A DNA stretch of 63,868 bases from Octopus sinensis (taxonomy: Eukaryota): the NCBI RefSeq assembly GCF_006345805.1, contig NW_021832256.1:1-63868 (forward strand), in the 5' to 3' direction. Each line of letters starts with the position of its first letter. The first letter of the stretch is position 1. Below, piece after piece: positions 3,201-61,844 of this stretch. The translations under genes were made by a program, and so were the position numbers. The notes below the pieces were generated by a model. That model was given only the letters and a program-made list of their open reading frames with translations, made no database searches and was not told the origin of the DNA.

Positions 3201-3303
3201 GCTAAAAGGCATTCGTGAGTAAATCATGTAGCAACACCAATGGCGGTACCCCAGCAGGCCACAGCTCGAGCTGAAACTAGATAAAATAAAATAAATAAAA
3301 AGA

Positions 3304-3760
3304 GGAGTGCTGTGTGTAAGTAGCTTCTAACCAACCACATGGTTCCGGTTCAGTCCCGCTGCGTGGCTCTTGGGCAAGTGTCTTTGCTATAGCCCCGTCC
3401 GACCAATGCCTTGTGTGGATTTGGTAACGGAAACTGAAAGAATGCTGTCGTATATATGTTAATATTTATATATTATATATATATATAAGATATATATATA
3501 TATTATATATATAGATATATATATATATATAATTGTGTGTGTATTGTGTGTGTTTTGTTTGTGTCTGCGTTTGTCCCCCTAGCATTGCTTGACAACCGAT
3601 GCTGGTGTGTTTACTCCCCGTCACTTAGCGTTTCGCAAAAGAGACCGATAGAATAAGTACGGGCTTACAAGAATAAGTCCCGGGTCGATTTGCTCGACTG
3701 AAGACGGTCTCAGCAAACCGCAGTCAAATGACCTGAAACAAGTTAAATAGTAAAAGAGTA
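3304..3760 (+). mobile_element. tRNA/CORE-like SINE family A with internal (TA)n(TG)n tract
   Basis: Head GGAGTG(G)CTGTGTG(G)TAAGTAGC...CCCACTGCGTGGC..TTGGGCAAGTG and tail GCAGTCAAATGACTGAAACAAGT; many copies in window. Confidence 0.8.
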
Positions 3761-3974: not shown

Positions 3975-4084
3975 TCGATGAATAGATAGATAGATCGATA
4001 GATAGATAGATCGATCGATCGATCGATAGATAGATATATAATAGATAGATAGACAATATAGAAGAGAGAGATAGATAGACAGAC

Positions 4085-4139
<55 letters not shown>

Positions 4140-4143
4140 AGAT
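3975..4143. repeat. (GATA)n microsatellite abutting the 3' end of Tx1 element A
   Basis: Direct inspection. Confidence 0.95.
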
Positions 4144-4521
4144 ATGTTTTTCTTTATTAGCCACACAGGGCTGCACACAGATAGAACAAATTACAAGGTA
4201 GAGCTTTTCTTTTGAAGGTTTAAAAAAAAAAAAAAAAAGGAAAGGGGGGATTCGATCAAAGGGATCGTAAAAGGAGAGAAAGAGGACAAAAAATGGGGGT
4301 TAAAAAAAGGGGGGAGAGAAAAAAAAATTGATCAATAGGGATCGTTATCACAGAAATGTCAATATGAAGTGTAAAGGGAGACAGGTGAGGTTTACCCGTG
4401 GAAAGAAAAGCCTACGGAAAGACCACGGTACCCTCGGTCAATGAAGTCACATTTATATTTCTTTTTTTTTTTTTTTTTTTTTTTTTGCAAATAAGCAAAT
4501 CTCTGTTTTCAATTTCTGGGT

Positions 4522-7500
4522 TCATAGGATTATGCTCAAGGTGGCTTCGTCATTCATACGTGCCATTCTTGCTACATTCACCCATCTTTTTTTAAAACAT
4601 TCGCTAGACAAAACTTGCCTCTCTACTCTCACTTTCCTTTTCAAGTGGTACTTGAAGAAGTTGATGAGAGATTGACCAGAGAGGAAAGTGTTTGTCTCCA
4701 ATCCTTTCAGACGCGTCCACCAGATACATTCTTTCGCCATAGCCACAAGGATGATGAAAATAGCTCTTCCTTCCCGTTTGAAGGAAGGAGGCGTGACAAT
4801 ATTGACGATAGACTCAGCTGATAAACCGACTCGTCCCACACGTGACAGCAGTTGTTCGACATAAGCCCACAGGTCGGAAATTGTTGGACACTGAACGAGT
4901 GCGTGCAGAACGGTTTCGTCGCTCTGACCGCATCTCGGGCAGGTCGGCCCCGTGTTTCTCGAGCCGTGTCTGTAGAGCTTATCCCGAACGGGTAGCGCTT
5001 CTCGGTAGCACTGCCAGGCCAGGGATCTCTGGAAGTTGTCCATGGGCCCTGGCCCGAAAGTCGTCCTGAACAGGCGGGTCAGGTACTCCTCGTCGACGTC
5101 CAGGTTCGCCCCGAGCTCGTCGTCGTACCTCCCCTCCACTAAACCCCTATAGAATGCTTTGGTTGTGTTGAAGTCACTTAAGGTCGACCCAGGACGGCAG
5201 AGTTGCTTGAGAGCAACGCGACACTCGCGGTGCCATTCGCCCTTCCTCGGCCTCTTTTTGATCCACGACTGCAGTTCGGTCATGGAGACGAGCTGCGGGA
5301 AAGCGTGCCTCACAAACGGCGACCACACCTGTTCACCGTCGTCTACATAGAGCCAGAGATGTCGCAGTCTCAGCGCGTGTCTGCGCATCATCAACCACGG
5401 CATGCCCAGCCCTCCTTTTAACGGGTGTTGACAGCAAATGGATCGCCTGACCATCGGGACGCATCCTTTCCACAAGAAGCGAAAGAGAATGCGTTGTAGT
5501 TTGGTGATGGTAGGGTCGGGACAAGGTACGACGGTCAGGCGGTAGTAGATGACGGACGCGATGTACGTGTTCGCCACCTCCGCTCGACCTTTTAGGGACA
5601 GTTTCCTCTCGGCCATTGCCGGGCGAGAGTGACCACCCTACTCGTTATCTCGTTCCAGTTCTTCTCCACTTGGAGGTCCGGACCAAACCAGACCCCGAGC
5701 AACTCAACCGGGCCGTCGGTCCAGCGTCCCACGACGGAGGCGCTGGTGGACGGCATGGGCTTGCTTCTCCAGGTGCCTAGTCGCAAGCCCACTGACTTTT
5801 CCCGGTTGATTTTCGCTCCTGTCACCGCTTCGTAGTTTTTCAGTGTCTCGCCGACCAGCTCGATGTGCTCGTGGCTAGACACTATGACGGTGACGTCGTC
5901 CGCGTATGCAGACACGCTCGTCCCGCATCCCAATTCTCGCGGGATGCCCCTTAGAGTCGCCAGCTTCCGCAGTAGTGGCTCAAGAGTCAATACGTATAGA
6001 AGCGCCGAGAGGGGGCATCCCTGACGGACCGAACGTGCAATGTCGAAAGGTCTCGATAGATGTCCATTTACGCGAATTACCGAACGGATGCCTCTGTACA
6101 AGGCAGCTATCCAGCCGCGGAAGACGGGACCGAAACCAGCCGCTCTCAGGACTGCCTCCAAGTATCGATGGTCTACCCTATCAAGGCTTTCGATTGATCC
6201 AAGTTGATCAGGGCCCCACCCATGCCAGGTTCGTTAACTACCCTGTCTATGATGTAGCGCATCAGATGGAGGTTGTCATGGATGGTCCGGCCTGGCACGG
6301 CGCACGTTTGCGCCTTGTCGACCAGTTTCTCGATGACAAGCGCCAACCTCTTGGCTAGCACCTTGGCCAAAATTTTCAAGTCTGCATTAAGCAGAGTGAT
6401 GGGCCTAAAGTTATCTATTACATTTCCTTGTTTAGATCTTTCTTCAGCAGTGTTACGGCTCCTCGGCTCACAAAACCAGGAATGCTCCCGTTTTGCTGCC
6501 AGTTGCAGTACACCGCCGCCAGAGATCTCCAAACAGTCTGGCATACAATTGTAAGCTCGTAGGTAGACCATCCAAACCCGGTGATTTGTCCCTCGAGCAT
6601 TCTGCCATCGCTTCCCGCACTTCCGCCGCCGTGATGGCACCTTCGCAGCACCCTGCCTTTCTTGTCGAGAGTCGTGGTAGGCTATGTAGGTAGGCACTGA
6701 AGTCCACCCTACGTTCTTGCCCTCCACTCGTTCCGAACAGTCGGGCAAAATGCTGCTGAAAGGCCTCACACATTTTACTTGGCTCGAGCAATTCGCGCCC
6801 CTGTTCATCTACCAGTGACCGAATGGTGGCTTTGTTGCCCTGTTGCGCCTCTGCCACCCGGGCCTCTCTCGCGGCTCCAACACCTTCGTTCCTTAGAGCA
6901 CGCATCCTAGCTCTGACAGCACATCCTTCGTGTTTGGCGTTGAAGTGTTGGTCGAGGGCCAACCTCGCCGCCAAAACGTCGGATGCGATGCCGCTTCTAA
7001 TTGCCTCTTCTAGCTTCTTAACTAGCTCACCCTCTACTCTATTTCTATCTATGGCTAGTGCTTTGCTGTACCTAATCGCTTCTGCTTTTACTGCTCTCTT
7101 GAGGGCAAACCACCATTTGTTGTTGATGATGGCTCCCGTCAAAGCCCTCTTTACTAGTGTGCTAATCCGGTCTCTGAAAACCTGTCTCGATGGGAAAGAC
7201 GCGTTTAGTTTCCAGTATCCGGGACCCTGCCTAAGTGTCTTACCTAAGTCTAGCGTACATGTCACAAGTTTGTGATCCGTGTAGCTGACTATGTGGAATT
7301 GTGGACATCCTATGCTATCTCTATCTACTGTCCTACACAGTATCCTATCTAGATACGATCTCGACGACCCGATGCGGTTGCTCCATGTCCACGTTGGCGC
7401 ATTCGGGTGGTCTAGTCGGAACCTGTCAGACAGTTGAAAGCGTCTGAGCAGGTCTCTGAGGCATTTGCATCCCCGTCTATTCCTATCTCTACCCACGTAG

Positions 7501-7952
7501 TCTACATGCGTGTCCAAGGTAGCATTCCAATCCCCCACTAAGAGTAAAGGACGAGACGTTCCCAAGAATACTTCTAGACGTTGAAAGAAATCCGCCCGAC
7601 CTGTTAAGGGCGGTGCGTAAACTGATACGAGTCGAAAAGCGCACCCATTGCTGCCGTCGACATCCAGGACGACCAGTCTACCCTCCGGGTCTACGAATAT
7701 TGTCCTTACTTTGAGATCCAGACTCTTGTGAAAAAGTACCGCGGTGCCACTACCGCCCATTCTCGGCAGACAGGGGGAAAAATAAATGTTGAACTGTCCG
7801 CCAAACATGGTCTTTAGGGCCCGCGGATTGTGGAGTCTGGTCTCACTTATGGCTATGATTTCTAACTTATGTGACTTTATGTCATTTAAGAGGTACCCTT
7901 GTTTCCAAGGGGACCCCAAGCCACGCGCATTTACACAACCAATCTTGATCAT
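4522..7952 (-). pseudogene. Element A ORF2: APE endonuclease + reverse transcriptase + zf-RVT-like motif, several frameshifts
   Basis: MIKIGCVNARGL, LLLVGDWNA, SYLDRI, SYTDHK (APE); FRPITLLNADLKILAK, VRQGCPLS, AYADD (RT); CPRCGQSDETVLHALVQC. Confidence 0.92.
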
Positions 7953-8071
7953 AGTTCTAATGAATTAGAATACAGAGGGTTACTTACTGCTCGAAAGTTT
8001 TTGCTTTCTCCTCCGTTGGTTTGTCCTCGAGAAGATCCCAGTACAGTTTCTTTGTGAGATATTTTTGGCAT

Positions 8072-9966
8072 TTACCAACCGCACTGGGGAAAATGCCTTT
8101 GAGTGTGTGGTGCAGACTTTTGGAGATGTGTAATATTTTGATGTGGTCTGGTGGTGTTGTGTATGGGTGTTGTTTGTTTTTTTATGTCATCTTCTGTTAT
8201 GTTTGTTTTTGATTGGATGTATTCCATCAAATTTGTGTTTTTGGTGTCTATGGCTGTGAGCATGTTTGCTGTATATGTTTTTGTGGTGTTGGTGTGGCTG
8301 TTGTTTGCGTTGGGTTTTGAAATGTCTTCGGGAGATGTATTTCCCCCTGCTTTGTTCGTGTTTGCATTTGGTTTGGTTGTGTTTCTGCTCTTTATTTTCC
8401 TTCTTTTTGTAGCTATTTGCCATTCCTCACTGGTTTCGTCTTCCGACGAAATTTCTGAGGAATCAGAAGGGGGTAGGGGTATGTTGTGGGCTTCTATGTA
8501 TGTCTGTGTAAGGGGTTGTGTGTTTGTTTTCGTTGTTGTTGGTTGTTGAGTGTTTGTGTGTGTTGAGTGCGGTATAAGGGATGGGGGATCAGTTTGTGTG
8601 TGTTTTCTTTGTTTTTCTGTTCCTTTGGGTTTTGCTGTTGTTCTTGGTGTTGGAATTGGTTTATTTGTTGTTGGTGGTGATGATTCTGTTCTTGGCGCTG
8701 GTGTTGGTGTTGTTTGGTTGGGTGGCTTGTTCTTGTTGTTTTTTCTGCATTTCCGCATACAGCTTCTTGACTAGCTGTCCATATTGTGGTGTGGGCAATA
8801 ATCCTGGCTTTTGTGATTTTTCCTGTGGCTGTTGTTGTTGTTGTAATTTTGCGGCAGATTTGCACTCCTTTTTGAGGTGTGCCTCACTGCCACATGTATA
8901 GCATCGTGGCCTTCTGCCCTCGACTACTACGTATAACTTGCGGCCATCCTCAAGATGTACGTGGGTGGGGATTTTATTTATGTCCTCTTGACTTATGTGG
9001 AAGAGGAACTCTATTCTCTTTCCCAGCCAGTCCTTGTTTTCCGAAACACCGATATCTAGGATGTTTAAGTCCTCCATTTCGGATGTTAAGGCGGATGTTA
9101 TCCACAGTGTTGTAGTCACTTGGGGGACACCACTGATAATGACTTTCGTCACCTTCTGGCCGAGGTAACTCGGTGTCAACGTTAGTTCATCAGAATGAAG
9201 GGTTATCGTTGAGAATTTCTTCGCCAACTCTTCATTCTGAAAAACCACCTGTACGTGTGCGAACTTGTTCGCCCAAGTCACACAATCCTTGTATCCCCAG
9301 ATGGGGCGTAAGCACTTTTCGACTTTGTCTGTGCTTGCCTTTTCTGGACTTTTAGTTTTTTATTTGTGATTTTATATACAATTGTCTTTTTTTCTCCTCA
9401 TTCAGTATGTGCTGAGGTATGTGTAAGAGTATTTTTCCGTTTTCATTTGTAATAAGGTTTCTGCAATCTTTAATCTGTTGTGTAGTAAACGAAACTTTTG
9501 TTACCTTTTCTTTTATCGCCTCGGCGAAGTTTGTTGTTGTTTTGTTATTGTTGTTACTGCCGGTGGTGTTGGTGTTGATGGCAGGGGTGTGGGTTGTAGG
9601 TTTGTGGTTGCTGATTATGCAACTAGCAAGGGGTGGAAAATTGCCTGCGTAATTTAGTCCTGCATTAGCGCAAATTTCGGCATTTCGTTTGCTGTCGTCG
9701 TTATTTTCCACTTGTTGGTGAGTGAGCAGTGGTTGAAGGGAATTGTTGGTTGTCGTCGTCGTCGTCGTCGTCGTTGTTGTTGTGTTGTTGTTGTTGTTGT
9801 GTTGTTGTTGTTGTTTTGTTATTGTCGTTCTGGGTGACGGCGGTGGTGTTAGTAGTATTAGTAGCATTGACGGCACGGTCTTTGGTGGCGGTGATGGTGG
9901 TGTTGGTATTGTTATTGGTGGCGATGTCTTTAGTAGGGATAGCAGTTTTAGTAGCAGATTCGCCAT
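8072..9966 (-). pseudogene. Element A ORF1 (gag-like, CCHC zinc knuckle, low-complexity T/N/Q), frameshifted
   Basis: RPRCYTCGSEAHLKKEC in ORF 8661-9281; lies upstream of ORF2; homologous to element B ORF1. Confidence 0.8.
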
Positions 9967-10394
9967 GGTGTTGTTGTCGGTGTTGGGGTGGACTTACTGA
10001 TGGTGTTGACGGTGCTTGGCCTTGCGACCTTTGTTTTGTATTTGTTGCTGTTGTCGATGTTGATGGTGGTGGAGGTGTGTTTGTTGTCACGTTCAGCGTA
10101 TGCTAACAGAGCATCCTGTTTTTCTGTCCTGCGTCACGCTTGACTTGCACCTCAGCCTCGTGGTGACCAGTGGCCATTTTGGAAATAAAATGGCTAAATG
10201 AAACCACGAAGGCTATGAGAATTTTTTCTTTTAAATTTTGCCCACAAGGCAAAATTTTGTGTAGATATTTATCAAAGGTTTGCAGTGGATGTGTTGCACA
10301 ACTTTTAACACAAAATATTTGTCAATATACACTTTTGAACGTATAAAATACCAACTTACGTGGAGCCCATTTGACTTGCGTCTGTCTGTCCAAG

Positions 10395-10488
10395 AGAGAT
10401 AGATAGATAGAGATAGATAGAATAATAGATGATAGATAGATAGTAGATAGATAGATAGATTATAGACAGATAGCAGACAGATAGATAG

Positions 10489-10519
<31 letters not shown>

Positions 10520-10893
10520 CAATAGAAGGATAGATAATAATAGATAGAATAGATAGATAAGATAGTGATAGACAGATAGCAGACAGATAGATAGATAGAT
10601 AATAGATAATAGATAGATAGATAGATAGATAGATGATAGATAGATTGAGATAGATAGATAGATAGATAGAATAGATAGATAGACAGATAGAGAGAGAGAG
10701 AGAGTATAGATAGATAGATAGATAGATAGATGATAGATATGATAGACAGACAGATGATAGATATATAGATAGAGAAGAGAGAAGAGGGAGATAATATAGA
10801 GAGGTATATACATTATATTATATATATATAGATAGATAGATAGATAGAAGAGAGAGGGAGATAAGAGGAGAGGTTATACATATATATATATAT

Positions 10894-10960
<67 letters not shown>
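10395..10960. repeat. Degenerate (GATA)n/(GA)n tract between the two Tx1 elements
   Basis: Direct inspection. Confidence 0.95.
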
Positions 10961-10961
<1 letters not shown>

Positions 10962-11256
10962 CGTTTTATTGTAGCCACACAGGGCTAAACACAGATTAAA
11001 AATGGACGAAATACAATGTAGAATTTTTTTCTTTTCAGGTGGGATGGGTGGGGCACAAAAAAAAAAACAACGTTTGATCAATAGGGATCTGTGGGGTTGT
11101 GTGGTGTATAAAAAGCAATATATATATATATATATAAGGTTCACAGTTTAGGTGTAGCCTTGGAAAGAAAAACCTACAAAAAAGACCAAGGTCACCTCAG
11201 ACAATTCGAAAAAGAACACATGAGCAAGTCGCCTTACTTCTCGTTGTCTCTTTTGG

Positions 11257-14200
11257 TTACAGATTTATGCTTAAAATAGTGTCGTCTTTCATACTGACCA
11301 TTTTTGCCACTTTTACCCACTTTTTATTAAAACATTCGTTCGACAAAGCCTTCCTCTCTATTCTCATCCTCCTTGAAAAAGTTGACACTTGGTACTTGAA
11401 AAAGTTGACAAGAGACTTACCAGAGAGTAAGGTGTTTGTTTGCAGTCCTTTCAAACGCGTCCACCACACACATTCTTTCGCCATAGCCATCAGCGTAACG
11501 AAAACCGTGTTCCCTTCCCGTTTAAAGGAAGGTGGTGGAACAATATTCACGATAGACTCGGCCGATAGGAGGGCCCGACCTACACGTGACAACAGCTGTT
11601 CGACGAAGGACCACAGCTCTGAAATATCTGGACACTGCACGAGTGCGTGCAGAACGGTTTCGTCGCTCTGACCGCATCTCGGGCAGGTCGGTCCGGTGAT
11701 GGTTTTCGAACCGTGCCTGTAGCTCTTCTCTCGAACAGGTATGCGTCTCGCCTCGATAGCATTGCAAGCCAGGGATTTCTGGAAGTTATCCATAGGCCCC
11801 GGCCCGAACGTCGTCCTGAACAGGCGGGTTAGGAATTCCTCGTCGACGCCCAGGTTTGCCCCGAGTGTGTCGTCGGACCTCCCCTCCACTAGTCCTCTAT
11901 AGAACGCTTTAGTCGTTTGTAAGTTGCACAAGTTTGACCCCGGTCGGCAGAGCTGCTGTAGAGCTTGGCGACACTCTCGGTGCCAATCGCCCAGTTTCGG
12001 TCTCTTCTTGATCCACGTTTGCAGTTCGGTCAGTGAGACGAGCTGCGGGAAAGCGCGCCTCACAAACGGTGCCCACACCTGTTCACCGTCGTCGATGAAG
12101 TTCCAGAGATCGCAGTCTCAGCGCATGCCTGCGCATCATCAACCACGGCATGCCCAGTCCTCCATTCAACGGATGTTGACAGCAAATAGACTTCCTCACC
12201 ATCGGAACGCGGAAGAGTATGCGTTCCAGTTTGGTGATGGTGGCGTCGGGACAAGGCACGACGGTCAGGCGGTAATCGATGACGGATGCGATGTACGCGT
12301 TCGCCACCTCCGCCCGGCCTTTTAGAGACAGCTTTCTCTCGGCCCATGTTTGGCTGAGAGCGACCATTCTACTCGTGATCTCGTCCCAGTTCTTATCCAT
12401 TTGGAGGTCCGGACTGAACCAGACCCCGAGCAATTTAACCGATCCGTCCGTCCAGCGTCCCACTACTGAGCCACAGTCGGACGGCATGGGCTTGCTTCTC
12501 CAGGTGCCAAGTAGCAAACCCACTGACTTTTCCGGGTTAATCTTCGCTCCCGTCACCGTTTCGTATTTTCTTAGTGTCTCGCCTATCATCTGGATGTGTT
12601 TGTCGCTCGACTCTATGACGGTGACATCGTCCGCATATGCCGACACGCTCGTCCCGCAACCCAGTTCCCGTGGGATGCCCCTCAGTGTTGCCAGCTTCCG
12701 TAGTAGCGGCTCGAGAGTCAATACATACAGAAGCGCCGACAGGGGACACCCCTGACGGACCGAACGCGTGATGTCAAACGGTTTCGATAAGTGGCCATTC
12801 ACCCGAATCACCGATCGAATGCCGCTATACAAGGCAGCGATCCAACCGCAGAAGACGGGACCGAAGCCAGCCGCCCTGAGGACGGCCGCCAAGTACCGAT
12901 GGTCGACCCTATCGAAGGCTTTAGACTGATCCAAATTTATCAGCGCCCCACCCATGCCAGGATCCTTAACTACCCTGTCCACAATGTAGCACATCAGATG
13001 GAGGGTGTCATGTATGTTTCTGCCCGGCACAGCGCATGCTGCATGTCCTGTCGACCATTTACCAACCATGACAAGTGCCAACCTCTCGGCTATTACTTTG
13101 GCCAAAATTTTCAAATTTGCGTTGAGCAGAGTGATGGACCTGAAATCTATAAAATTCCCCTTGTTTGGGTCTTTCTTCAGCAACGTCACTGCACCTCGGC
13201 TCACGAAACCGGGGATTCTCCCGTTTTGTTGCCAGTTGCAGTAGACTGATGCCAAGAGGTCGCCAAACAAGCCTGGCATTTGACAATACAGCTCGTAGGG
13301 TAAACCATCCAATCCAGGCGACTTATCCCTCGCGCATCCCGCCATCGCATCCCGCACGTCAGCGGCTGTGATGGGACTTTCACAACACTCCGCTTCTCTT
13401 GCCGAGAGCCGCAACAAGTCGGTCAGGTAGGCACTGAAATCCATCCCGCGTTCCGACCCACCACTCGCACCAAACAGTCGAGCAAAGTGCTGTTGAAAGG
13501 CCTCACACATCCTTTCAGGTTCGAGTAAACTGCATCCCTGTTGATCTATTAGAGACCGAATGGTGGCTCTGTTGCCACGCTGCGCCTCCGCTACCCTGGC
13601 CTCTCGCGCAGCTTCGATCCCTTCGTTCCTTAAGGCACGCATTTTAGCTCTGACGACGCAACCTTCGTGCTTGGCGTTGGGTGTTGGTCGAGGGCCATCC
13701 TCGCAGCGCACGTTGGTTGCGCTGCCATTGGTATGCCTCTTCTAGTTTCTTAACTAGGTCTCTCTCTACTCTATTTCGATCTATCGCTAATTCCTTGCTA
13801 ACCTAATTGATTCCGATTTTATTGCCATTTTCAGGGCGGTACCACCAGCGGTTGTTAACGACGGCTCCCGTCAGCGCCTCTTGATTAACTCGCTAATCCG
13901 GTTCCTGTAAACCTGTCGCGCTAAGAGCGACGTGTTCAGTTTCCAGTAACCGGGACCCTGTCTATGTGTCTTATCTAAGTCGAGCGTACACGTCACAAAT
14001 TTGTGATCTGTGTAGCTGACTATTTTAAATTGTGGACATCCTACACTATCCTTATCCGCTGTCCTGCATAGAATTCTATCTAGATAAGATCTCGACGATC
14101 CGACGCGGTTTGTCCAAGTCCACGTTGGCACGTTCAGATGGTCGAGTCAGAACCTGTCAGACAAATGGAAACGTCTGAGTAGGTCTTTGAGGCACTTACA

Positions 14201-14683
14201 CCCCCCTCTATTCCTATCTATTCCCACATAATCTAGATGCGTGTCCAAGGTAGCGTTACAATCCCCTACTAACAGTAAAGGTCTAGACGTACCCAGGAAA
14301 ACCTCTAGACGTCTGAAGAAATCCGCCCGACCCGTTAAGGACGGTGCATAAACTGCCATCAGACGGAATGCACACCCATTTCTGCCATCCACGTCCAAGA
14401 CAACTAGCCTACCCGCCGGGTCTAGGAATATTGTTCTTACTTTTACATTTAGACTCTTTCGAAAAAGCACCGCGGTAGATCCACCACCCATGTTCGGCAG
14501 ACAAGGAGAAAAATAAATGTCAAATTGATCGCCAAACATGGACGCGAGGGCCCACGGCTTGCTGAGTCTAGTTTCACTGATAGCTACTATATCCACGTTC
14601 AGTGACTTGATGTTGTTTAGAAGGTAACCTTGCTTCCAAGCCGATGCCAAGCCACGCGCATTCACACAACCTAATTTAAGCAT
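11257..14683 (-). pseudogene. Element B ORF2 (APE-RT-zf), frameshifted with an internal deletion near 13.7 kb
   Basis: MLKLGCVNARGL, SYTDHK, LDQSKAFDRVDH, VRQGCPLS, AYADD, CPRCGQSDETVLHALVQC. Confidence 0.92.
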
Positions 14684-14771
14684 AATTGACGTTTACGAAA
14701 ATTGTGTTTCACACACTACATTGGAAGAGACAAGAGGCAAGAGGGAAGGTCACTTACTCATTTCGAAAGTT

Positions 14772-16518
14772 TCATTTTTTTTCTTCTTCTTTTGTAGTGT
14801 CTTTGATGAGGTGTTTGTATAGTTTTTTGGAGATGTATCGTTGAAACCCGCCTACCGCATTTGGAAATATTGTTTTCAGTGTATGGTGTTGTGTTTGTGT
14901 TATGTGTACAATTCTTATGTGTTTCGGTGGTGTGGTGCGCGGATGATTGTTTGTCTTAAAGTCATCTTCACAGATGTCCGTGTTGGATGCAATGTAATCC
15001 ATAAATTTTTTATTGTCTGTGTCTATTGCAGTTAGTTGTGTGTGTGGTTTTGCGGGTTCATTGATTTTTTGATTGTCTAGGGGGATGCTGTCCGGAGTTA
15101 AATATCTCCCTGCTTTACTTCCTTGTTTGGTAGGCTTTTTTAATCTTTTCCTTTTACCCCCTGTGGCTATTTGCCATTCCGTCGAACTTTCGTCGTCCGA
15201 CGAATCAGAAGGGGGTAAAGGTAAATCATTTGCGTTAATATGTATGCTTGTAGAAATTGTTGATGTTTTGTGCGGTGTTTGTGTTGTTGTGGTGTTAGGG
15301 GTAGAATTTGTCTTCTCGTCACTGTTTTCTGTCTTTTTAATTGTCGTCCTCGGTGTTGGTGTTGATCTATTTTTTGTTGGTTCAGCATGTTGAATTGGTT
15401 GCGACGTCAACAGTGATTGTGTTGGTACCGTTTCTTTTCTTGGTGATGTTGTTGGGGTTTGTTTGCTGGTTTGTTGTTTTTCTTGGCATTGTTCCATAAT
15501 TGAGTGTGTTGGTGTTGGTGTTGGTTTTGGCAACAAGGGTTTTTTATTTGTTTTCTGATTTGTTCTTTCTTGTTTTTTTCTGTGCCAGAGCGCACTTGGC
15601 AATTAAATGTTCTGGGCTGCCACAGTTGTAGCATCTAGGCTTTTTGCCTTCTGCTACAACATATAGGCTTTGCCCATTTTCTAAGTGGATCCTATCAGGT
15701 AGGTTCTCGATAGAGGACCCCTCAATCATGATGTTCACTACTATTGTTTTTCCACTCCAATTGTCGTTTTCGTATACGGCAATCTCTAAAATATTTATAG
15801 TTTTCAAATGGTAACAGATTGCCCCTGTTATCCATTTGTTAGAAATCTCGGGGGGTACATTTTTAATAGTAATTCTACTGACTCTCTGGCCTTTGTAATA
15901 AGGTACCATGATGATTTCATCATTCTGCAAAGACTCCGTAGAGTGAGCTTTTGCCACTTCCTGTTTAGGGAAGCGGACCACCACTGTATTAAACTGGGGA
16001 CCCCAGTTTTTTTTTTTTTCATTATGTTTTTTAAACACTTTTCTATGTCCGTTTTTGTAATCTGTTCATTTCGTTTTTTGTTTTTTCTTATAATTTTATA
16101 TATAATTGTCTTATTTTCTATTTGTACCTTTATGTGTTGAGGTGTATGCAGCACTAAATCTTGCCCTTGAGTTGTAAAGAGTGCTCTCGTTTCTATTAAC
16201 TCTTCATTCGTAAATTTTACTATTTCTTTTTTTGTGACGCAGAGTGTCAGCGAAATTTACTGGTGTTGTTGATTCTTTTATATTAACGTCTTCACTATGA
16301 GATAGTAAGATATTTATTTCATTTTTATTGTTGTTCTTCTTGTTGTTGTTGTTTTTGTTAATAGTATTCGCGTGAGTTTCATTTTTATCATTTATGTTGG
16401 TGGTGGTGGAGGTGGTGGTGGTAGCAGTAGTAGTCTCGTTGTTGTTGTTAGTGGTGGTGGTGGTGGTGGTGGTGGTGACAGGGCTGTTACCGCAAGTGGT
16501 TGCAGCGTTCACTACCAC
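14772..16518 (-). pseudogene. Element B ORF1 (CCHC knuckle), frameshifted
   Basis: KPRCYNCGSPEHLIAKC; SDSSDDESSTEWQIAT resembles element A SDSSEISSEDETSEEWQIAT. Confidence 0.8.
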
Positions 16519-16835
16519 GTCATTCAGGTTTGCACTTTGCGTGCATAAGTTCTTTTTTTCACCTAGCGTTTCCAGACTAGGAAAATGCTAGTCCATAAAG
16601 GAACGCGACCAGCGTTCTACAATAAAATTTCTCGATATTTTCTAATGTCGAGAAGAAAATTACACTAATTAAATAGGGTTGAAACTGCCCCTAGGGACGA
16701 ATTCCTCCCTTGGAAAAGCACCCAAACGAAAGTTGGGTGCCTTACACACCTTATTTACAAAAATGTACACAAAATATTGGCTATAAATAGTCAAAATAAA
16801 CGATTACCTTCGGAGCCGAGATGACAGTACGTCCG

Positions 16836-16871
<36 letters not shown>

Positions 16872-16876
16872 GAGAC

Positions 16877-16936
<60 letters not shown>

Positions 16937-16948
16937 GGATAGATAGGC

Positions 16949-17011
<63 letters not shown>

Positions 17012-17026
17012 ATAGATGGATGGATG

Positions 17027-17107
<81 letters not shown>
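16836..17107. repeat. (GACA)n(GATA)n microsatellite at the 5' end of element B
   Basis: Direct inspection. Confidence 0.95.
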
Positions 17108-17560: not shown

Positions 17561-17567
17561 AAAGACC

Positions 17568-18353
17568 TATTTCTTTACTACCCACAAGGGGCTAAACACA
17601 GAGAGGACAAACAAGGACAGACACACGGACTAAGTCGATTATATCGACCCCAGTGCGTAACTGGTACTTATTTAATCGACCCCGAAAGGATGAAAGGTGA
17701 AGTCGACCTCGGCGGAATTTGAACTCAGAACGTAACAGCAGACGAAATACCTATTTCTTACTACTCACAAGGGCTAACACAGAGAGGACAAACAAGGACA
17801 GACAAACGGATTAAGTCAATTACATCGACCCCAGTGCGTAACTGGTACTTATTTAATCGACCCCGAAAGGATGAAAGGCAAAGTTGACCTCGGCGGAATT
17901 TGAACTCAGAACGTAAAAACAGAAATACCTATTTCTTTACTACCCACAAGGGGTTAAACACAGAGAGGACAAACAAGGACAGACAAACGGATTAAGTCAA
18001 TTACATCGACCCCAGTGCGAAACTGGTACTTATTTAAACGACCCCGAAAGGATGAAAGGCAAAGTTGACCTCGGCGGAATTTGAACTCAGAACGTAAAAA
18101 CAGAAATACCTATTTCTTTACTACCCACAAGGGGCTAAACACAGAGAGGACAAACAAGGACAGACAAACGGATTAAGTCAATTACATTGATCCCAGTGCG
18201 TAACTGGTACTTAATTTATCGACCCCGAAAGGATGAAAGGCAAATTCGACCTGGGCGGAATTTGAACTCAGAACGTAGCGGCAGAGGAAATACTGGTAAG
18301 CATTTCGCCCGGCCTGCTAACGTTTCTGCCAGTTTGCCACCTAAATACCACAA
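17568..18353 (-). mobile_element. SINE family M (tRNA head + central domain + Tx1-like tail): one headed copy plus three tandem 3' units
   Basis: Unit boundaries at 17568, 17752, 17930 and 18111; single head at ~18290-18353; core GCCTTTCATCCTTTCGGGGTCGAT resembles the Meta/Sauria-type domain as I recall it (unverified). Confidence 0.85.
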
Positions 18354-19350: not shown

Positions 19351-20530
19351 TTATGGCTGCCCCCTCGTTATCGAGTATGGCCACTGCACGAAGCTTAACT
19401 GTTACTGGTGCTGTGATCGAATGTGACTTTTTAGCCCAGCTAAAGATCTACAATGTCTTGTACAGAATTGGCAACTAAAACCTTTACTGGTAATAGCCGG
19501 CTGTAGTTGTAACTGGGCTTCATGTACCTTTGCATGTCGTTTAAGTCCTCCTGCCGAATTACACTCTCTTCCACATGCCCGACAGATATGATTAGTATGG
19601 TGTGTTACACCACCACCATTAGCCAGGTTGTCACTCATCTGTCTAGTTTTATGACTACGAAGATGACTCATGAGTCCAGCTTTACTGAGGCAGTGTCTTG
19701 CACAGACATTGCATGTCAGAATCAAAGGAAAACCCTTCCCTTCTGGAAGTGTAACAGCGATGCCCTTCCTGACATCTCTCCTTACTTTCTCATGTGCAAC
19801 TCGAGATTTCTCAAAAGTAGCTGTCCCCTCGTGCACAATCCTTCTCCACCTGCTACGATCAATAGCTATGCCTTCCCATGTGTCAGGAGAGATGCAAGCA
19901 TCTCTTAAGGAAGCCTTCAGCAAGTCCTTATACCTCTTTTTTGGTTTATGTGGAGGTCGTTCTCCTTTAGCTAACTCTCCATAAAAGAGTTGTTTTGGCA
20001 TCCTTGAATCCTTCATCCTGACCAGATGACCACTCCATCTGAGCCTTTGCTTTAACACAAGAGCTTCCATACTTTCACACCGAGAGCCTTCCAATATTTC
20101 AAGATCACTGATGCGATCCTCCCACTTAATGCCATAGATCCGTCTGAGACACACCTGATGGAAATGTTCCAGTTGTTTAAGGTGGTATCGATATGTGACC
20201 CACGTCTCGCAGGTATAGAGAAGAGAAGGGAGGACACATGTCTTGTACACCTTTATCTTTGTCTTTCTGCATATGTCTCGCTGACTCCAGGGGCGCCTTT
20301 CTAGCCTTCCGAAAGCATCACTTGCTTTCCTAATTCAGTATGGAATTTCACCATCCAAATTGCTATATCTATTAACAGTGCTTCCCGGGTAGACAAACTG
20401 ATCGACTACATCAAGTCGTTTACCATACACATAGATATTTGGTACACTATACTGCCTACCAGGGGTAGTTTGGTACATGACAACAGTTTCTTGAGACTGA
20501 CTGTCAACTCTAAGGCAGTGCAAGCATCAG
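19351..20530 (-). mobile_element. 5'-truncated RTE/BovB-like LINE with three C-terminal C2H2 fingers and (ATGT)n tail
   Basis: YKTCVLPSLLYTCETW...RLRWSGHLVRM...QLFYGEL (RTE RT C-terminus), then three CxxC...HxxxH fingers. Confidence 0.85.
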
Positions 20531-27680: not shown

Positions 27681-27785
27681 TACATCGTTTGTAGAAATGC
27701 ATTAATCTGGAGGAGCACACTGTAAGATGCACAGCAGTTAATATTGTAGTGGGGTCAGGGTTTAGGGTTAGGGGGCACAAACGTT

Positions 27786-28975
27786 AGCACACCGGACGAA
27801 ATGCTTTGTGGTATTTCGTCCGCCGCTGCGTTCTGAGTTCAAATTCCGCTGAGGTCGACTTTACCTTTCATCCTTTCAGGGTCGATAAATTAAGTACCTA
27901 TTTCTTTGTTACCCACAAGGGGCTAAACACAGAGGGCACAAACAGGGACAGACATAGGTATTAAGTCGATTACATCGACCCCAGTGCGTAACTGGTACTT
28001 ATTTAATCGACCCCGAAAGGATGAAAGGTAAAGTCGACCCCGGCGGAACTTGAACTCAGAACGTAGCGGCGGACGAAATACCTATTTCTCTACTACCCAC
28101 AAGGGGCTAAACACTGAGAGGACAAACAAGGACAGACAAACAGATTAAGTTGATTATATCGACCCCAGTGCGTAACTGGTACTTATTTAATCGACCCCGA
28201 AAGGATGAAAGGTAAAGTCGACCCCGGCGGAACTTGAACTCAGAACGTAGCGGCGGACGAAATACCTATTTCTCTACTACCCACAAGGGGCTAAACACTG
28301 AGAGGACAAACAAGGACAGACAAACAGATTAAGTTGATTATATCGACCCCAGTGCGTAACTGGTACTTATTTAATCGACCCCGAAAGGATGAAAGGTAAA
28401 GTCGACCCCGGCGGAACTTGAACTCAGAACGTAGCGGCGGACGAAATACCTATTCTCTACTACCACAAGGGGCTAAACACTGAGAGGACAAACAAGGACA
28501 GACAAACAGATTAAGTTGATTATATCGATCCCAGTGCGTAACTGGTACTTATTTAATCGACCCCGAAAGATGAAAGGTAAAGTCGACCCCGGCGGAATTT
28601 GAACTCAGAACGTAGCGGCGGACGAAATACCTATTTCTCTACTACCCACAAGGGGCTAAACACTGAGAGGACAAACAAGGACAGACAAACAGATTAAGTT
28701 GATTATATCGACCCCAGTGCGTAACTGGTACTTATTTAATCGACCCCGAAAGGATGAAAGGCAAAGTGAACCTCGGCGGAATTTGAACTCAGAACATAGC
28801 GGCAGACGAAATACCGCTGAGCATTTCGCCCGGCGTGCTAACGTTTCTGCCAGCTCGCCGCCTTAGATAAATTAAGTACCAGTTATGCACTGGGGTCGAT
28901 GTAATCCACCTAATCCGTTTGTCTGTACTTGTTTGTCCCCTCTATGTTTAGCCCCTTGTGGGCAATAAAGAAATA
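27786..28975 (+). mobile_element. SINE family M copy interrupted by an antisense five-unit family M concatemer
   Basis: Host halves 27786-27898 and 28866-28975; GATAAATTAAGTACC duplicated at 27884-27898 and 28866-28880. Confidence 0.85.
27899..28865 (-). mobile_element. SINE family M concatemer (one head + five bodies) with 15-bp TSD
   Basis: Unit boundaries at 27899, 28083, 28267, 28451 and 28632; single head ending at 28865. Confidence 0.88.
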
Positions 28976-29024
28976 AATATTGTAGTGGGGTAGACCGGTA
29001 TGTGTGTGTGTGTGTGTGGTGTGG

Positions 29025-30546: not shown

Positions 30547-31522
30547 CTGTGGCTGTGTGGTAAGTAGCTTGCTTACCAACCACATGGTTCCGGGTTCAGT
30601 CCCACTGTGTGTCACCTTGGGCAAGTGTCTTCTACTATAGCCTACCTTGTGAGTGGATTTGGTAGACGGAAACTGAAAAGAAGCCTATCGTATATATGTA
30701 TATACATATATGTGTAGGAGTGGCTGTGTGGTAAGTAGCTTGCTTACCAACCACATGGTTCCGGGTTCAGTCCCACTGCGTGGCACCTTGGGCAAGTGTC
30801 TTCTGCTATAGCCCCGGGCCGACCAATGCCTTGTCAGTAGATTTAGTAGACGGAAACTGAAAAGAAGCCTGTCGTATATATGTATATACATATATGTGTA
30901 GGAGTGGCTGTGTGGTAAGTAGCTTGCTTACCAACCACATGGTTCCGGGTTCAGTCCCACTGCGTGGAACCTTGGGCAAGTGTCTTCTGCTATAGCCTAC
31001 CTTGTGAGTGGATTTGGTAGACGGAAACTGAAAAGAAGCCTATCGTATATATATATACGACAAAAGGAAAAGATCCTTATTTACATTTCTGAAGAAAAAA
31101 AGGATACCCTACCCCCACCCCTAACCCTAACCCTAAAATAGATTGGCTGTGTGGTAAGTAGCTTGCTAATCAACCACATGGTTCCGGGTTCAGTCCCACT
31201 GTGTGGCACCTTGGGCAAGTGTCTTCTGCTATAGCCTCGGGCCGACCAATGCCTTGTGAGTGGATTTGGTAAATGGAAACTGAAAGAAGCCCGTCGTATA
31301 TATGTATATATATATATGTGTGTGTGTATGTGTTTGTCCCCCTAGCATTGCTTGACAACCGATGCTGGTGTGTTTACGTCCCCGTTACTTAGCGGTTCGG
31401 CAAAAGAGACCGATAGAATAAGTACTGGGCTTACAAAAGAATAAGTCCCGGGGTCGATTTGCTCGATTAAAGGCGGTGCTCCAGCATGGCCGCAGTCAAA
31501 TGACTGAAACAAGTAAAAGAGT
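30547..31522 (+). mobile_element. SINE family A array: three 5' halves, a foldback fragment, then a complete copy
   Basis: Heads at ~30547, 30717, 30900 and 31145. Confidence 0.8.
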
Positions 31523-39224: not shown

Positions 39225-39490
39225 TTGCCGATGCCAGCGCCGCCTTGACTGACTTCCGTGCCGGTGGCACATAAAAAGCACCAATCCGATCATGGCCGTT
39301 GCCAGCCTCGCTTGGCACGTAAAAAGCACCCACTACACTCGCGGAGTGGTTGGCGTTAGGAAGGGCATCCAGCTGTAGAAACACTGCCAGATCAGACTGG
39401 AGCCTGGTGCAGCCTTCTGGCTTCCCAGATCCCCGGTCGAACCGTCCAACCCATGCTAGCATAGAGAATGGACGTTAAACGATGATGATG
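39225..39490 (+). mobile_element. Family C copy
   Basis: Ends in GGACGTTAAACGATGATGATG. Confidence 0.75.
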
Positions 39491-39704
39491 AATTGTTTCA
39501 AATTTTGGTTCAAGGCCAACAATTTTGAGGGGAGGGGCAAGGGAATTGCATCAGTCCCATTGTTCAGCCTATTTCCTATTTTATCAGCAATGAAAAAGGA
39601 GTACCGGCAGAGTTGACCTCAGTGGAATTTGAACTCAGAACAGAGAACCAGAAGAAATTCCACAAGGCGTTTTTTGTCTGATCTGCTAATGATTGTGCAA
39701 ACTC

Positions 39705-42700: not shown

Positions 42701-42945
42701 ATGTCCATTGAAGTCACCTGCCACAAAGAGAAGGTCACTGTCATTTGTCAACGAGGTAGTCTGTAATAGGGTGTTGTAGAATTGGTCTTTCTGTCCTTCC
42801 GGTAGCCCTGGTTGAGGGGCATATGCCGAGATGATGGTAACTGACCTATGGTGAAGCACTAATCTAATCTTAAGTACTCTGTCACTTACTCTGACTACCT
42901 CGATTACCTTATCTACTCATTTCTCCACAAGAAGTATACCCACGC
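39705..42945 (-). mobile_element. 5'-truncated RTE-like LINE (APE + RT with Cys-rich insert) with long modular 3' UTR
   Basis: ORF 42008-42859 (IISAYAP, VAGDFNGHVG, SQIDYIL); ORF 40284-41642 (DLEKAFD, HQGSVLSP, YADD, RLRWYGHV); UTR ends in (GAT)n. Confidence 0.9.
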
Positions 42946-44098: not shown

Positions 44099-44218
44099 AG
44101 TAGTAATAATAATAATATTTCTTTTATTTTCCACTAGGGTGAAAGATGAGCAGGACAATACGAAAACAGATATAAAGTGTTGGGGTTTGCATATAATGAA
44201 TTGATAAGAGAATTATCT

Positions 44219-46109: not shown

Positions 46110-46457
46110 CTTCTCTTCATCAATAAAAACAGTCATCCTGTTTGTTGTTCACACAACATTTTGGCTGATATACCCTCCAGCCTTTATCAGGTGTCTTGGG
46201 GAAGTTTCGAACCTGGGTTCTCATTCCTAAGGTATTTTTTTATGTTATTTTCCACATGAGACCTTTTCTTTTTTTCGAAGCGTCTCCTCTATTGGGAGTT
46301 TTGTAAATTGTTGAATTTTTCGTTGTTGTAAAGCTTGTTTACACGGACTTTTTTCTTTCGAAAAACGAACAAAACCTTTTGTAACCTTTCGTCCTGTTTT
46401 GTCCCTTTATGTTTTCCAATCATATTTGTCAGCCCTTGTGGCCAATAAAAAGAATTA

Positions 46458-46503
<46 letters not shown>

Positions 46504-49690: not shown

Positions 49691-49925
49691 ATATACAAAA
49701 AAAAGAAAACAATAAATGGAACAAGAGCGTAACAGGCGACAACAAAACATCCGGACAGTTAGGTGATACATAAAAGGACAGGAAAAAACAAGGATGGGTC
49801 ATTCGGAGCTTTCAATCTTCAGTCGACTACCAAATCGTTTTTGCAGTTTACTCGAGACTGCTATAATCTGGCCAGCCCCAAGAAAATCTAAGCCAAGAGC
49901 ACTACATTGCTATATATATATATAT

Positions 49926-50154
49926 ATTTCTTTACTACCCACAAGGGGCTAAACACAGAGGGGGACAAACAAGGACAGACAAACAGATTAAGTTGATTAC
50001 ATCAACCCCAGTGCGTAACTGGTACTTAATTTATCGACCCCGAAAGGATGAAAGGCAAAGTCGACCTCGGCGGAATTTGAACCCAGAACGTAACGGCAGA
50101 CGAAATATGGCTACGCATTTCGCCCGGCGTGCTAACGTTTCAGCCAGCTCGCCT

Positions 50155-52200: not shown

Positions 52201-52618
52201 AAGGCAGCGAGCTGGCAGAAACATTAGCACGCCAGGCGAAATGCTTGGCGGTATTTCGTCTGCCGCTACGTTCTGAGCTCAAATTCCGCCAAGGTCGACT
52301 TTGCCTTTCATCCTTTCAGGGCCGATAAATTAAGTACCAGTTATGCACTGGGGTCGATGTAATCGACTTAATCCATTTGTCTGTCCTTGTTTGTCCTCTC
52401 TGTGTTTAGCCCCTTGTGGGTAATAAAGAAATTGGTATTTCGTCTGCCGCTACGCTCTGAGTTCAAATTCCGCCGAGGTCGACTTTGCCTTTCATCCTTT
52501 CAGGGTCGATAAATTAAGTACCAGTTACGCACTGGGGTTGATGTAATCAACTTAATCCATGTGTCTGTCCGTGTTTGTCCCCTCTATGTTTAGCCCCCTG
52601 TGGGCAATAAAGAAATAA
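52201..52618 (+). mobile_element. SINE family M dimer (head + two bodies)
   Basis: GTATTTCGTC at 52251 and again at 52435. Confidence 0.85.
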
Positions 52619-54810: not shown

Positions 54811-54899
54811 CTCTGGAGCAGGAGTGAAGAACAGCTCTTTCGAGAGGTTACACTTTCCAAGTCCTTGCCAGTATGGAATATGGATGTTCAGTAATAGTT

Positions 54900-55098
54900 T
54901 CAACTTTTTGCACAAGGCCAATAATTTTGGAGGAGGGGGATGAGTCAAATACAGTGCTCAACTGGTACTTATTTTATTGACCCCGAAAGGATGAAAGGCA
55001 AAGTTGACCTTGGTGGAATTTGAACTTGGAATGTAAAGACAAAATGCCGCTAAGCATTTTGCCTGGGGTGCTAACAATTCTGCCAGCTTGCTGCCTTA
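54900..55098 (-). mobile_element. Family M head and core with an alternative (non-Tx1) tail
   Basis: Same head and core, but tail CCCCTCCTCCAAAATTATTGGCCTTGTGC; related tails near 469-550 and 39495-39550. Confidence 0.6.
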
Positions 55099-61798: not shown

Positions 61799-61840
<42 letters not shown>

Positions 61841-61844
61841 TGCA

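What the first reader, a model, noticed from the sequence alone, without database searches (positions are those of the whole stretch)
4144..4185. Tx1 LINE 3' stem-loop is shared with the tail of SINE family M
Seen: element A ends TCTGTGTGCAGCCCTGTGTGGCTAATAAAG, element B ends TCTGTGTTTAGCCCTGTGTGGCTACAATAAA, and SINE M ends TCTGTGTTTAGCCCCTTGTGGG(T/C)A(G/A)TAAAGAAATA. All fold into a short GCC/GGC-type stem with a CT(G/T)TGT-like loop before the A-rich signal. The same SINE head and core carries a different tail at 54900-55098, so the Tx1-like tail looks like an acquired module. Known: shared 3' tails mark stringent LINE/SINE partners, mostly described for CR1, L2 and RTE. Inference: SINE M is mobilised by these Tx1 elements.
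Basis: partly seen in the sequence, partly recalled or inferred. Interest (0 to 1): 0.75.

Follow-up and report, generated by a model that had tools for sequence, protein, structure and literature searches.

The report
Octopus SINE borrows L1/Tx1-type LINE tail
A short mobile element (SINE) that is very common in this octopus-like genome ends in the same ~45-base tail, with a small hairpin, as a family of L1/Tx1-type LINEs. It therefore probably uses that LINE family's enzymes to copy itself, but not the two broken LINE copies next to the reported site.

Summary
LINE A (tail 4147-4187, minus strand), LINE B (10961-11001, minus strand) and every SINE M copy carry the same terminal motif: TCTGTGT, then a GC hairpin, then an A-rich end. 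The best local alignment between the SINE and each 6-kb LINE falls exactly on both 3' termini.

I fetched related LINE copies from Octopus sinensis, Argonauta hians and environmental contigs. In these the last 40 nt is the only conserved part of the 3' UTR: 71% mean identity, against 51% upstream, which is the shuffle level.

SINE M matches the O. sinensis copy best (88%; blastn E about 1e-9). It matches LINE A at 71% and LINE B at 64%. A and B are frame-broken and end in (TATC)n, which the SINE lacks, so the likely partner is a sister subfamily with no repeat tail.

In Argonauta the same tail sits on several different SINE bodies. In the window the same head and core also occurs with another tail. 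Both facts support a swappable tail module.

Every tail folds into the apical 3-4 bp hairpin, and RNAalifold finds it independently. Support from covariation is thin: one compensatory pair and non-significant energies.

Assignment to the L1 superfamily is solid. Tx1 is consistent with the evidence but was not tested by phylogeny. Mobilisation is inferred, not shown. Verdict: a new member of a known kind (stringent LINE/SINE pair).

The parts
4147..4187 (-). LINE A 3'-terminal module: TCTGTGT, AGCC/GGCT hairpin with CTGTGT loop, then AATAAAGAAA
   Evidence: Sequence read. Covariance-model hit of 51.2 bits, E 7e-11. Fold.
4145..10392 (-). LINE A, full length. ORF1 has a CCHC knuckle. ORF2 (APE, RT, zf-RVT) is broken into at least 4 reading-frame pieces.
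   Evidence: ORFs. Pfam. Best PDB match is human L1 ORF2p. 5' end aligned.
10961..11001 (-). LINE B 3'-terminal module
   Evidence: Covariance-model hit of 35.3 bits, E 1.6e-6.
10961..16835 (-). LINE B, full length and degenerate. 80% identical to LINE A over 3.4 kb.
3982..4144 (.). (TATC)n microsatellite abutting the 3' end of LINE A
   Evidence: TRF; sequence
10393..10960 (.). (TATC)n between the 5' end of LINE A and the 3' end of LINE B
16836..17107 (.). (TCTA)n upstream of the 5' end of LINE B. No LINE tail precedes it.
17565..18342 (-). SINE M array: one full unit plus three 5'-truncated units, each ending in the shared tail
   Evidence: TRF period 181; covariance-model hits
27896..28863 (-). 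SINE M array: one full unit plus four truncated units. It is inserted inside another SINE M copy with a ~15-bp target-site duplication.
27774..27898 (+). 5' half of the interrupted SINE M copy (SINE positions 13-137)
28866..28975 (+). 3' half of the interrupted SINE M copy, including the tail. The target-site duplication AATATTGTAGTGGGGT follows it.
49925..50153 (-). Single SINE M copy inserted in (TA)n
52212..52617 (+). SINE M dimer: one full unit plus one truncated unit
46415..46499 (+). 5'-truncated LINE 3' end of a third subfamily: ...CAGCCCTTGTGGCCAATAAAAAGAATTA followed by (ATT)14
   Evidence: Covariance-model hit of 37.8 bits.
44100..44165 (-). Degenerate LINE tail fragment followed by a short (ATT)n run
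54880..55095 (-). SINE with the same head and core as SINE M but a different tail (...CCCCCTCCTCCAAAATTATTGGCCTTGTGCAAAAAGTTGAAACTATTA)
39470..39660 (-). Second, more divergent SINE carrying the alternative tail type

Best explanation
The feature is the 3'-terminal recognition module of an octopod LINE family in the L1 superfamily, most likely L1-Tx1. The module is about 40-45 nt long. It consists of a U/G-rich arm (UCUGUGU), a 3-4 bp G-C hairpin with a CUUGU or CUGUGU loop, and an A-rich end (AAUAAAGAAAU).

A SINE family with a Pol III-type head has captured a copy of this module as its own tail. The proposed mechanism is stringent-type recognition. The LINE ORF2 protein binds this terminal module on its own RNA and starts target-primed reverse transcription at the ...GAAAU(A) end. 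SINE RNA carrying the same module is picked up in trans, which gives insertions flanked by 12-16 bp target-site duplications.

Shown here:
- homology located at both termini;
- selective conservation of the tail across divergent LINE subfamilies and three octopod sources;
- the tail behaving as a swappable module;
- target-site duplications;
- a hairpin that is always present.

Inferred: protein recognition and trans-mobilisation.

The partner is most likely a subfamily without a microsatellite tail, of the type found in O. sinensis locus L010. It is not the (TATC)n-tailed, frame-broken copies A and B in the window.
For: 1. The best SINE-versus-LINE local alignment is terminal in both elements.
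2. LINE tails from O. sinensis (L010) and Argonauta (L009), used as blastn queries, hit every SINE M tail. The best hit is 43 nt at 88%, E 1.6e-9. The reverse query gives E 1e-6.
3. Among 8 LINE 3' ends, the last 40 nt average 71% identity against 44% for shuffles. The 150 nt upstream average 51%, which equals the shuffle level. The L009 and L010 tails are 90% identical although their ORF2 C-termini share only 50% of amino acids.
4. SINE M tail identity is 88% to L010, 80% to L009, 71% to LINE A and 64% to LINE B.
5. A covariance model built from the tails finds the same module on several different SINE-like bodies in Argonauta. An Argonauta SINE with a 12-bp target-site duplication carries its own LINE's tail variant.
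6. The same head and core occurs with another tail in the window.
7. The hairpin is in the minimum-energy fold of 10 of 10 tails and is the RNAalifold consensus. Pair 21-31 is C-G in the 7 window SINE variants and G-C in 6 LINE or Argonauta sequences. 87.9% of cells are paired, against 44-52% when the partners are slid.
8. SINE target-site duplications are about 15-16 bp in the window and 12 bp in Argonauta.
9. ORF2 carries APE, RT and zf-RVT, and ORF1 carries CCHC. The best solved-structure match is human L1 ORF2p.
10. The other APE+RT LINE in the window (40284-42859) lacks the motif.
Against: - Hairpin energies are not better than shuffles (z from -0.02 to -2.0).
- There is only one compensatory pair, probably a single event on the SINE M lineage. 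The lower stem shows no double changes.
- The conserved AATAAA could reflect a polyadenylation signal rather than RT recognition.
- No intact LINE of the best-matching subfamily was seen. L010 is a 5'-truncated copy, and A and B are broken.
- LINE target-site duplications and target preference could not be compared with those of the SINE in the same genome.
- Other LINE clades of this genome (RTE, CR1, Dong-R4) were not surveyed outside the window.
- ARAGORN and Rfam do not call a tRNA in the SINE head.
Confidence: 0.7

Rival explanations
1. One reading: LINE A and LINE B, or their (TATC)n-tailed subfamilies, are themselves what mobilises SINE M.
For: They share TCTGTGT(T/G)(T/C)AGCCC...GTGG...TAA at the terminus. 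LINE B has the identical 14-mer TCTGTGTTTAGCCC.
Against: - Both copies have a multiply interrupted ORF2.
- Tail identity to the SINE is only 71% and 64%, against 88% for L010.
- Their hairpin uses a shifted register and a 6-nt loop, and in the SINE register pair 21-31 is C-C.
- They end in (TATC)n and sit in (TATC)n on both sides. No SINE M copy has or adjoins such a repeat.
Confidence: 0.12
2. The tail is shared by descent, but SINE M is now mobilised by a different LINE clade (for example RTE or CR1, both abundant in octopus). Under this view the tail is conserved in the LINEs for another reason, such as a polyadenylation signal.
For: AATAAA lies within the conserved block. The thermodynamic and covariation support for a recognition hairpin is weak. 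Octopus carries several active LINE clades (PMC13282606).
Against: - Neither LINE nor SINE copies carry poly(A), so reverse transcription starts at the conserved end itself.
- Several unrelated SINE bodies in Argonauta all carry exactly this tail. That is what selection for RT recognition predicts.
- The one non-L1 LINE in the window lacks the motif.
Confidence: 0.13
3. The similarity arose by chance or from low-complexity sequence, or the LINEs captured their tail from the SINE (the reverse direction).
For: The shared block is short (33-50 nt against A and B). One of 200 shuffles reaches the raw alignment score.
Against: - The match is terminal in both elements.
- The blastn E-value is about 1e-9 for L010.
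- The tail is present in LINE subfamilies that share only 47-50% of amino acids, and in three sources, so it is ancestral to the LINE family.
- SINE heads and cores occur with other tails.
Confidence: 0.03
4. 'SINE M' in this window is mainly a tandem satellite with a period of 181-184 bp, not an actively retrotransposing SINE.
For: Three of the five loci are head-to-tail arrays.
Against: - A single dispersed copy and an interrupted copy both have target-site duplications.
- One whole array is flanked by a ~15-bp duplication inside another copy.
- Every array begins with one full-length unit that includes the head.
The arrays therefore look like products of SINE biology rather than an alternative to it.
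Confidence: 0.05

Closest known systems
[quoted passage not shown] 2014, PMC4176376)
   Same: The SINE tail is homologous to the LINE 3' terminus. A conserved terminal stem-loop precedes the end. There is no poly(A). The tail is the conserved part of the 3' UTR.
   Different: The LINE here belongs to the L1 superfamily (Tx1-like), not L2, CR1 or RTE. The hairpin is very short (3-4 bp). Protein binding and trans-mobilisation have not been tested.
L1-clade stringent pairs: maize LINE1-1_ZM with ZmSINE2/3, and Chlamydomonas L1-1_CR with SINEX-3_CR (Ohshima 2012, PMC3472496; Ohshima 2013, PMC3747384)
   Same: An L1-superfamily LINE with a conserved 3' end, including a stem-loop, that is shared with a SINE.
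   Different: Those pairs are from a plant and a green alga. The Chlamydomonas pair, like most plant L1-clade LINEs, ends in poly(A). This pair is from an animal (cephalopod), is Tx1-like, and ends in GAAAT(A) or in subfamily-specific microsatellites: (TATC)n, (ATT)n, or none.
Tx1-Mar LINEs and SINEU in crocodilians (Kojima 2015, PMC4494074)
   Same: A Tx1-group LINE is proposed as the mobiliser of a SINE.
   Different: That link rests on a shared insertion target (Mariner-N4_AMi), and the SINEs there have poly(A) tails and snRNA heads. Here the link is a shared 3' tail, and no shared specific target has been shown.
Octopus tRNA-derived SINEs OK, OR1 and OR2 (Ohshima and Okada 1994), annotated as tRNA-Core, tRNA-Deu or 'unclassified SINE' in octopus genomes (PMC8967140, PMC13282606)
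   Same: Abundant octopod SINEs with Pol III-type heads. SINE M is probably one of these families or a relative.
   Different: I could not obtain their sequences, so identity was not tested. None of the papers I read names a LINE partner for them.

Membership tests
Stringent-type LINE/SINE partner pair (shared 3' tail) | The SINE 3' end is homologous to the LINE 3' end, at the very terminus of both | tested here: met
   (88% over 40-43 nt to L010, E about 1e-9)
Stringent-type LINE/SINE partner pair (shared 3' tail) | The tail is selectively conserved among divergent LINE subfamilies | tested here: met
   the last 40 nt average 71% identity, against 51% for the upstream 150 nt (shuffle level); the corresponding ORF2 C-termini share 50% of amino acids.
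Stringent-type LINE/SINE partner pair (shared 3' tail) | A conserved stem-loop supported by compensatory changes | tested here: inconclusive
   The hairpin is present in all folds. There is one compensatory pair (C-G versus G-C) and several wobble-compatible changes. Energy z-scores are not significant.
Stringent-type LINE/SINE partner pair (shared 3' tail) | The same terminal repeat or end sequence in the SINE and its LINE | tested here: not met
   Not met for LINE A and B: they end in (TATC)n and SINE M ends in GAAATA. It is met for the L010 and L002 type copies, which end AAAGAAAT with no repeat.
Stringent-type LINE/SINE partner pair (shared 3' tail) | Trans-mobilisation of the SINE RNA by the LINE ORF2 protein | not testable with these tools
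   This needs a retrotransposition assay.
Tx1 group of the L1 superfamily | ORF2 with an N-terminal APE endonuclease, an RT and a C-terminal zinc-binding motif | tested here: met
   Pfam Exo_endo_phos, RVT_1 and zf-RVT
Tx1 group of the L1 superfamily | Closest to L1 among LINE proteins | tested here: met
   The best PDB matches are human L1 ORF2p (E 7e-32 for the RT part, 4e-12 for the EN part). R2 matches are much weaker.
Tx1 group of the L1 superfamily | ORF1 of the type I variant (RRM/zf-CCHC) rather than the mammalian Transposase_22 type | tested here: met
   A weak zf-CCHC match (below the Pfam cut-off for A, just above it for B) in both ORF1s and no Transposase_22. PMC5203782 links this ORF1 type in animals to Tx1.
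Tx1 group of the L1 superfamily | The RT domain groups with Tx1 reference elements in a phylogeny | not tested
Tx1 group of the L1 superfamily | Target-sequence-specific insertion | tested here: inconclusive
   A and B are bracketed by (TATC)n on both sides. Sister subfamilies carry (ATT)n only at the 3' end, or no repeat at all, so the repeats may be 3' tails rather than targets.
tRNA-derived SINE | A Pol III head recognisable as tRNA, with A and B boxes | tested here: inconclusive
   A B-box-like GAGTTCAAATTCC is visible by eye. ARAGORN and Rfam give no tRNA call.
tRNA-derived SINE | Short, non-coding, dispersed copies flanked by target-site duplications | tested here: met

The most novel reading that the evidence does not exclude
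Octopod L1/Tx1-type LINEs recognise their RNA in the stringent way, through a very small terminal hairpin module. This module has been captured repeatedly by several SINE families. On this reading the large, octopus-specific SINE expansion (about 12% of the O. vulgaris genome) is driven by a Tx1-type LINE. It would be the first tail-sharing SINE partnership for the Tx1 group, and evidence from an animal that stringent recognition is ancestral in the L1 superfamily.
Probability: 0.5. Interest if true: 0.6.

Novelty: new member of a known kind. Interest (0 to 1): 0.45.

Why it matters
SINEs are the main component of the repeat content of octopus genomes, and most are still annotated as 'unclassified', with no named LINE partner in the papers I could read. 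A tail-defined partner would show which LINE machinery drove that expansion.

It would also add an animal, Tx1-type example to the few L1-superfamily LINEs known to require a specific 3' end. So far these are maize and Chlamydomonas. That bears on whether the relaxed, poly(A)-based recognition of mammalian L1 is a derived state.

Finally, it gives a compact 40-nt element with natural variants (GGCC/GGCU, GCCC/GGGU, AGCC/GGCU) that can be tested directly.

Tried and rejected
1. The metagenome scan with CTTGTGGNNAATAAAN{0,1}GAAAT returned 120 loci. All were chance matches with no upstream hairpin half.
2. ARAGORN and Rfam at the gathering threshold and at E<=10 gave no tRNA or other family for the SINE head.
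3. The alternative SINE tail looked by eye like the 3' UTR of a more distant LINE lineage (L003/L005: CCCCTCCCCC...CGGCCTTGTGCCA). blastn-short finds only the 10-mer GGCCTTGTGC (E 6.3). I keep this as a lead, not a finding.
4. Contigs L001, L006, L007, L011 and L012 end before the LINE tail. P0124 was not on record.
5. L008 has only a degenerate version of the tail, followed by (AC)n.
6. The lower stem (UCU.UGUU with AAUA.AGA) suggested by RNAfold is not supported by any double change and is not in the RNAalifold consensus.
7. Literature searches found no paper linking an octopus SINE to a Tx1 tail. I could not check Repbase or Dfam.

Full report
**What is at the site.** The window is eukaryotic and rich in repeats. 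Proteins related to its LINE ORFs come from cephalopods: Octopus sinensis, O. bimaculoides, Argonauta hians and Acanthosepion. Coordinates 4144-4185 cover the 3' end of a full-length LINE on the minus strand (LINE A, 4145-10392). This end abuts a (TATC)n microsatellite at 3982-4144. A second full-length LINE (B, 10961-16835, minus strand) lies directly upstream. It is separated from A by (TATC)n at 10393-10960 and is followed at its own 5' side by (TCTA)n at 16836-17107.

**The LINEs.** Each LINE has an ORF1 with a CCHC knuckle and an ORF2 with an APE endonuclease, an RT and the zf-RVT motif. The best solved-structure match is human L1 ORF2p; R2 proteins match far more weakly. Both ORF2s are split into several frames. 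The two elements are 80% identical over 3.4 kb.

The quoted strings are present, and the degenerate motif occurs 14 times against 0 expected. Twelve of those hits are copies of one SINE, so I used independent tests.
- The best Smith-Waterman alignment between a SINE M copy and the whole of LINE A or B, on both strands, falls on the last ~35-50 nt of both elements.
- With LINE 3' ends fetched from other genomes as blastn queries, every SINE M tail in the window is hit. The best hit is 43 nt at 88% identity with E 1.6e-9.

**SINE M.** The full unit is about 235 nt. It has a head with a B-box-like GAGTTCAAATTCC, a core, and the tail ...TCTGTGTTTAGCCCCTTGTGGGTAGTAAAGAAATA. The copies are:
- a single element at 49925-50153;
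- an interrupted element at 27774-27898 plus 28866-28975, with the 16-bp target-site duplication AATATTGTAGTGGGGT;
- three head-to-tail arrays at 17565-18342, 27896-28863 and 52212-52617.

None of them has a poly(A) or microsatellite tail. ARAGORN and Rfam do not recognise a tRNA in the head, so a tRNA origin is plausible but was not shown here.

**The tail belongs to the LINE family.** I recovered related LINE 3' ends from several sources:
- Argonauta hians (L002, two copies, and L009);
- O. sinensis (L010);
- a JGI contig (L004);
- the window itself, where a 5'-truncated third subfamily lies at 46415-46499 and a degenerate fragment at 44100-44165.

All end in the same block, with 3' UTRs of 200-375 nt after the ORF2 stop. 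Across eight LINE ends the last 40 nt average 71% pairwise identity, against 44% for shuffles. The 150 nt upstream average 51%, which is exactly the shuffle level. L009 and L010 share 90% of the tail although their ORF2 C-termini are only 50% identical in amino acids. So the terminal module is the only part of the UTR under constraint. It is also ancestral to the LINE family, which makes LINE-to-SINE the likely direction of transfer.

**Which LINE is the partner.** Identity of the SINE M tail is 88% to L010, 80% to L009, 71% to LINE A and 64% to LINE B. L010 and the two L002 copies end AAAGAAAT directly at the flank, as SINE M does. A and B run into (TATC)n. The third window subfamily, L004 and L009 run into (ATT)n. 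A and B are therefore relatives of the partner, not the partner. They are also non-functional copies.

**Do the microsatellites mark tails or targets?** This stays open. (ATT)n occurs only on the 3' side of the elements that carry it, and its length varies from 4 to more than 30 units. That favours a tail added at the 3' end. A and B, in contrast, are bracketed by (TATC)n on both sides.

**The tail is a module.** In the window, the copy at 54880-55095 has the SINE M head and core (80.6% over positions 6-149) but a different tail. A second, more divergent copy with that tail type is at about 39470-39660, and a third breakpoint variant is in O. sinensis L010 at 3237-3400. Conversely, a covariance model built from the tails finds the same module on several different SINE-like bodies in the two Argonauta loci. 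One Argonauta SINE, with a 12-bp target-site duplication, carries the Argonauta LINE variant of the stem, GGCC/GGCT.

**Structure.** RNAfold places a 3-4 bp G-C hairpin with a 5-6 nt loop in the minimum-energy fold of all ten tails. RNAalifold returns exactly that hairpin as the consensus. The per-pair and energy evidence is as follows.
- Pair 21-31 of alignment A4 is C-G in all seven SINE M variants from the window. It is G-C in six LINE or Argonauta sequences.
- Pair 20-32 varies among G-U, G-C and A-U.
- 87.9% of cells pair, against 44-52% when the partners are slid.
- LINE A and B keep a 4-bp stem only in a register shifted by one (AGCC/GGCT).
- The energies are not better than shuffles (z from -0.02 to -2.0).
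- The single compensatory pair is probably one event.
- The lower stem suggested by RNAfold has no covariation support.

The hairpin is therefore plausible and consistently present, but not statistically established.

**Comparison with known systems.** Tail sharing defines stringent LINE/SINE pairs, and most of these involve CR1, L2 or RTE LINEs (PMC3747384). Recognition of a stem-loop by ORF2 was shown for zebrafish L2 (PMC4176376). Within the L1 superfamily, tail-sharing pairs are described for maize and Chlamydomonas (PMC3472496). For Tx1, the known SINE link (Tx1-Mar and SINEU) rests on a shared target and poly(A) tails, not on a shared tail (PMC4494074). Octopus genomes carry L1-Tx1 LINEs and very abundant SINEs that are mostly unclassified (PMC13282606; PMC8967140). 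I found no paper that names a partner for them. The Tx1 label fits the domain architecture and the ORF1 type (PMC5203782), but I could not run a phylogeny with Tx1 references.

**Verdict.** The mechanism is the ordinary stringent-type model applied to an L1/Tx1-type LINE in a cephalopod. This is a new member of a known kind, of moderate interest.

Noticed in passing
window 17565-18342 (-), 27896-28863 (-), 52212-52617 (+): SINE M forms head-to-tail arrays with a period of 181-184 bp. Each array starts with one full unit (positions 1-235), followed by units that begin at SINE position ~50. The junction ...AAGAAATA|GGTATTTC is a near-palindrome. This could come from RT template jumping between SINE RNAs or from a multimeric master copy. 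I did not resolve which.
   Followed up: partly
window 27774-28991: One SINE M array is inserted, in the opposite orientation, inside another SINE M copy, with a ~15-bp target-site duplication (GGTACTTAATTTATC). An array, or its founder, was therefore integrated as a single unit.
   Followed up: partly
window 27756-27773: Eighteen extra bases, CAGGGTTTAGGGTTAGGG (telomere-type TTAGGG repeats), sit between the target-site duplication and the 5'-truncated start of a SINE M copy.
   Followed up: no
window 3982-4144, 10393-10960, 16836-17107: The only GATA-type microsatellites in the window bracket the two full-length LINEs on both sides. Either the subfamily targets (GATA)n, or it carries (TATC)n tails and new copies insert into older tails.
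   Followed up: partly
L002 7600-9310 and L009 4390-5850 (Argonauta hians): Several SINE-like elements with different bodies all end in the same tail and all abut flanks starting TAT (GAAATC|TAT...), as does a truncated LINE copy at L002 6650. This hints at a shared nick-site preference.
   Followed up: partly
window 40284-42859 (-): A second, unrelated LINE (Exo_endo_phos_2 plus RVT_1) lies here. A 63-bp tandem repeat at 39864-40140 lies near its 3' side. It lacks the shared tail motif.
   Followed up: partly
window 39440-39760: The divergent alternative-tail SINE is flanked by a ~40-bp inverted repeat (ccgtccaacccatgctagcatgg... / ...ccatgctagcatgggttggacgg). It looks as if it inserted into a palindromic or MITE-like element.
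   Followed up: no
window 30645-30997 and 61840-61868: A different SINE-like family (…GGAGTGGCTGTGTGGTAAGTAGCTTGC…ACCAACCACATGGTTCCGG…) is also present, once as a 184-bp tandem dimer.
   Followed up: no
window 19402-20250 (-): This ORF has several weak matches to C2H2 zinc-finger Pfam families, most of them below the curated cut-offs. It may be a fragment of a zinc-finger gene, a family said to be expanded in octopus.
   Followed up: no
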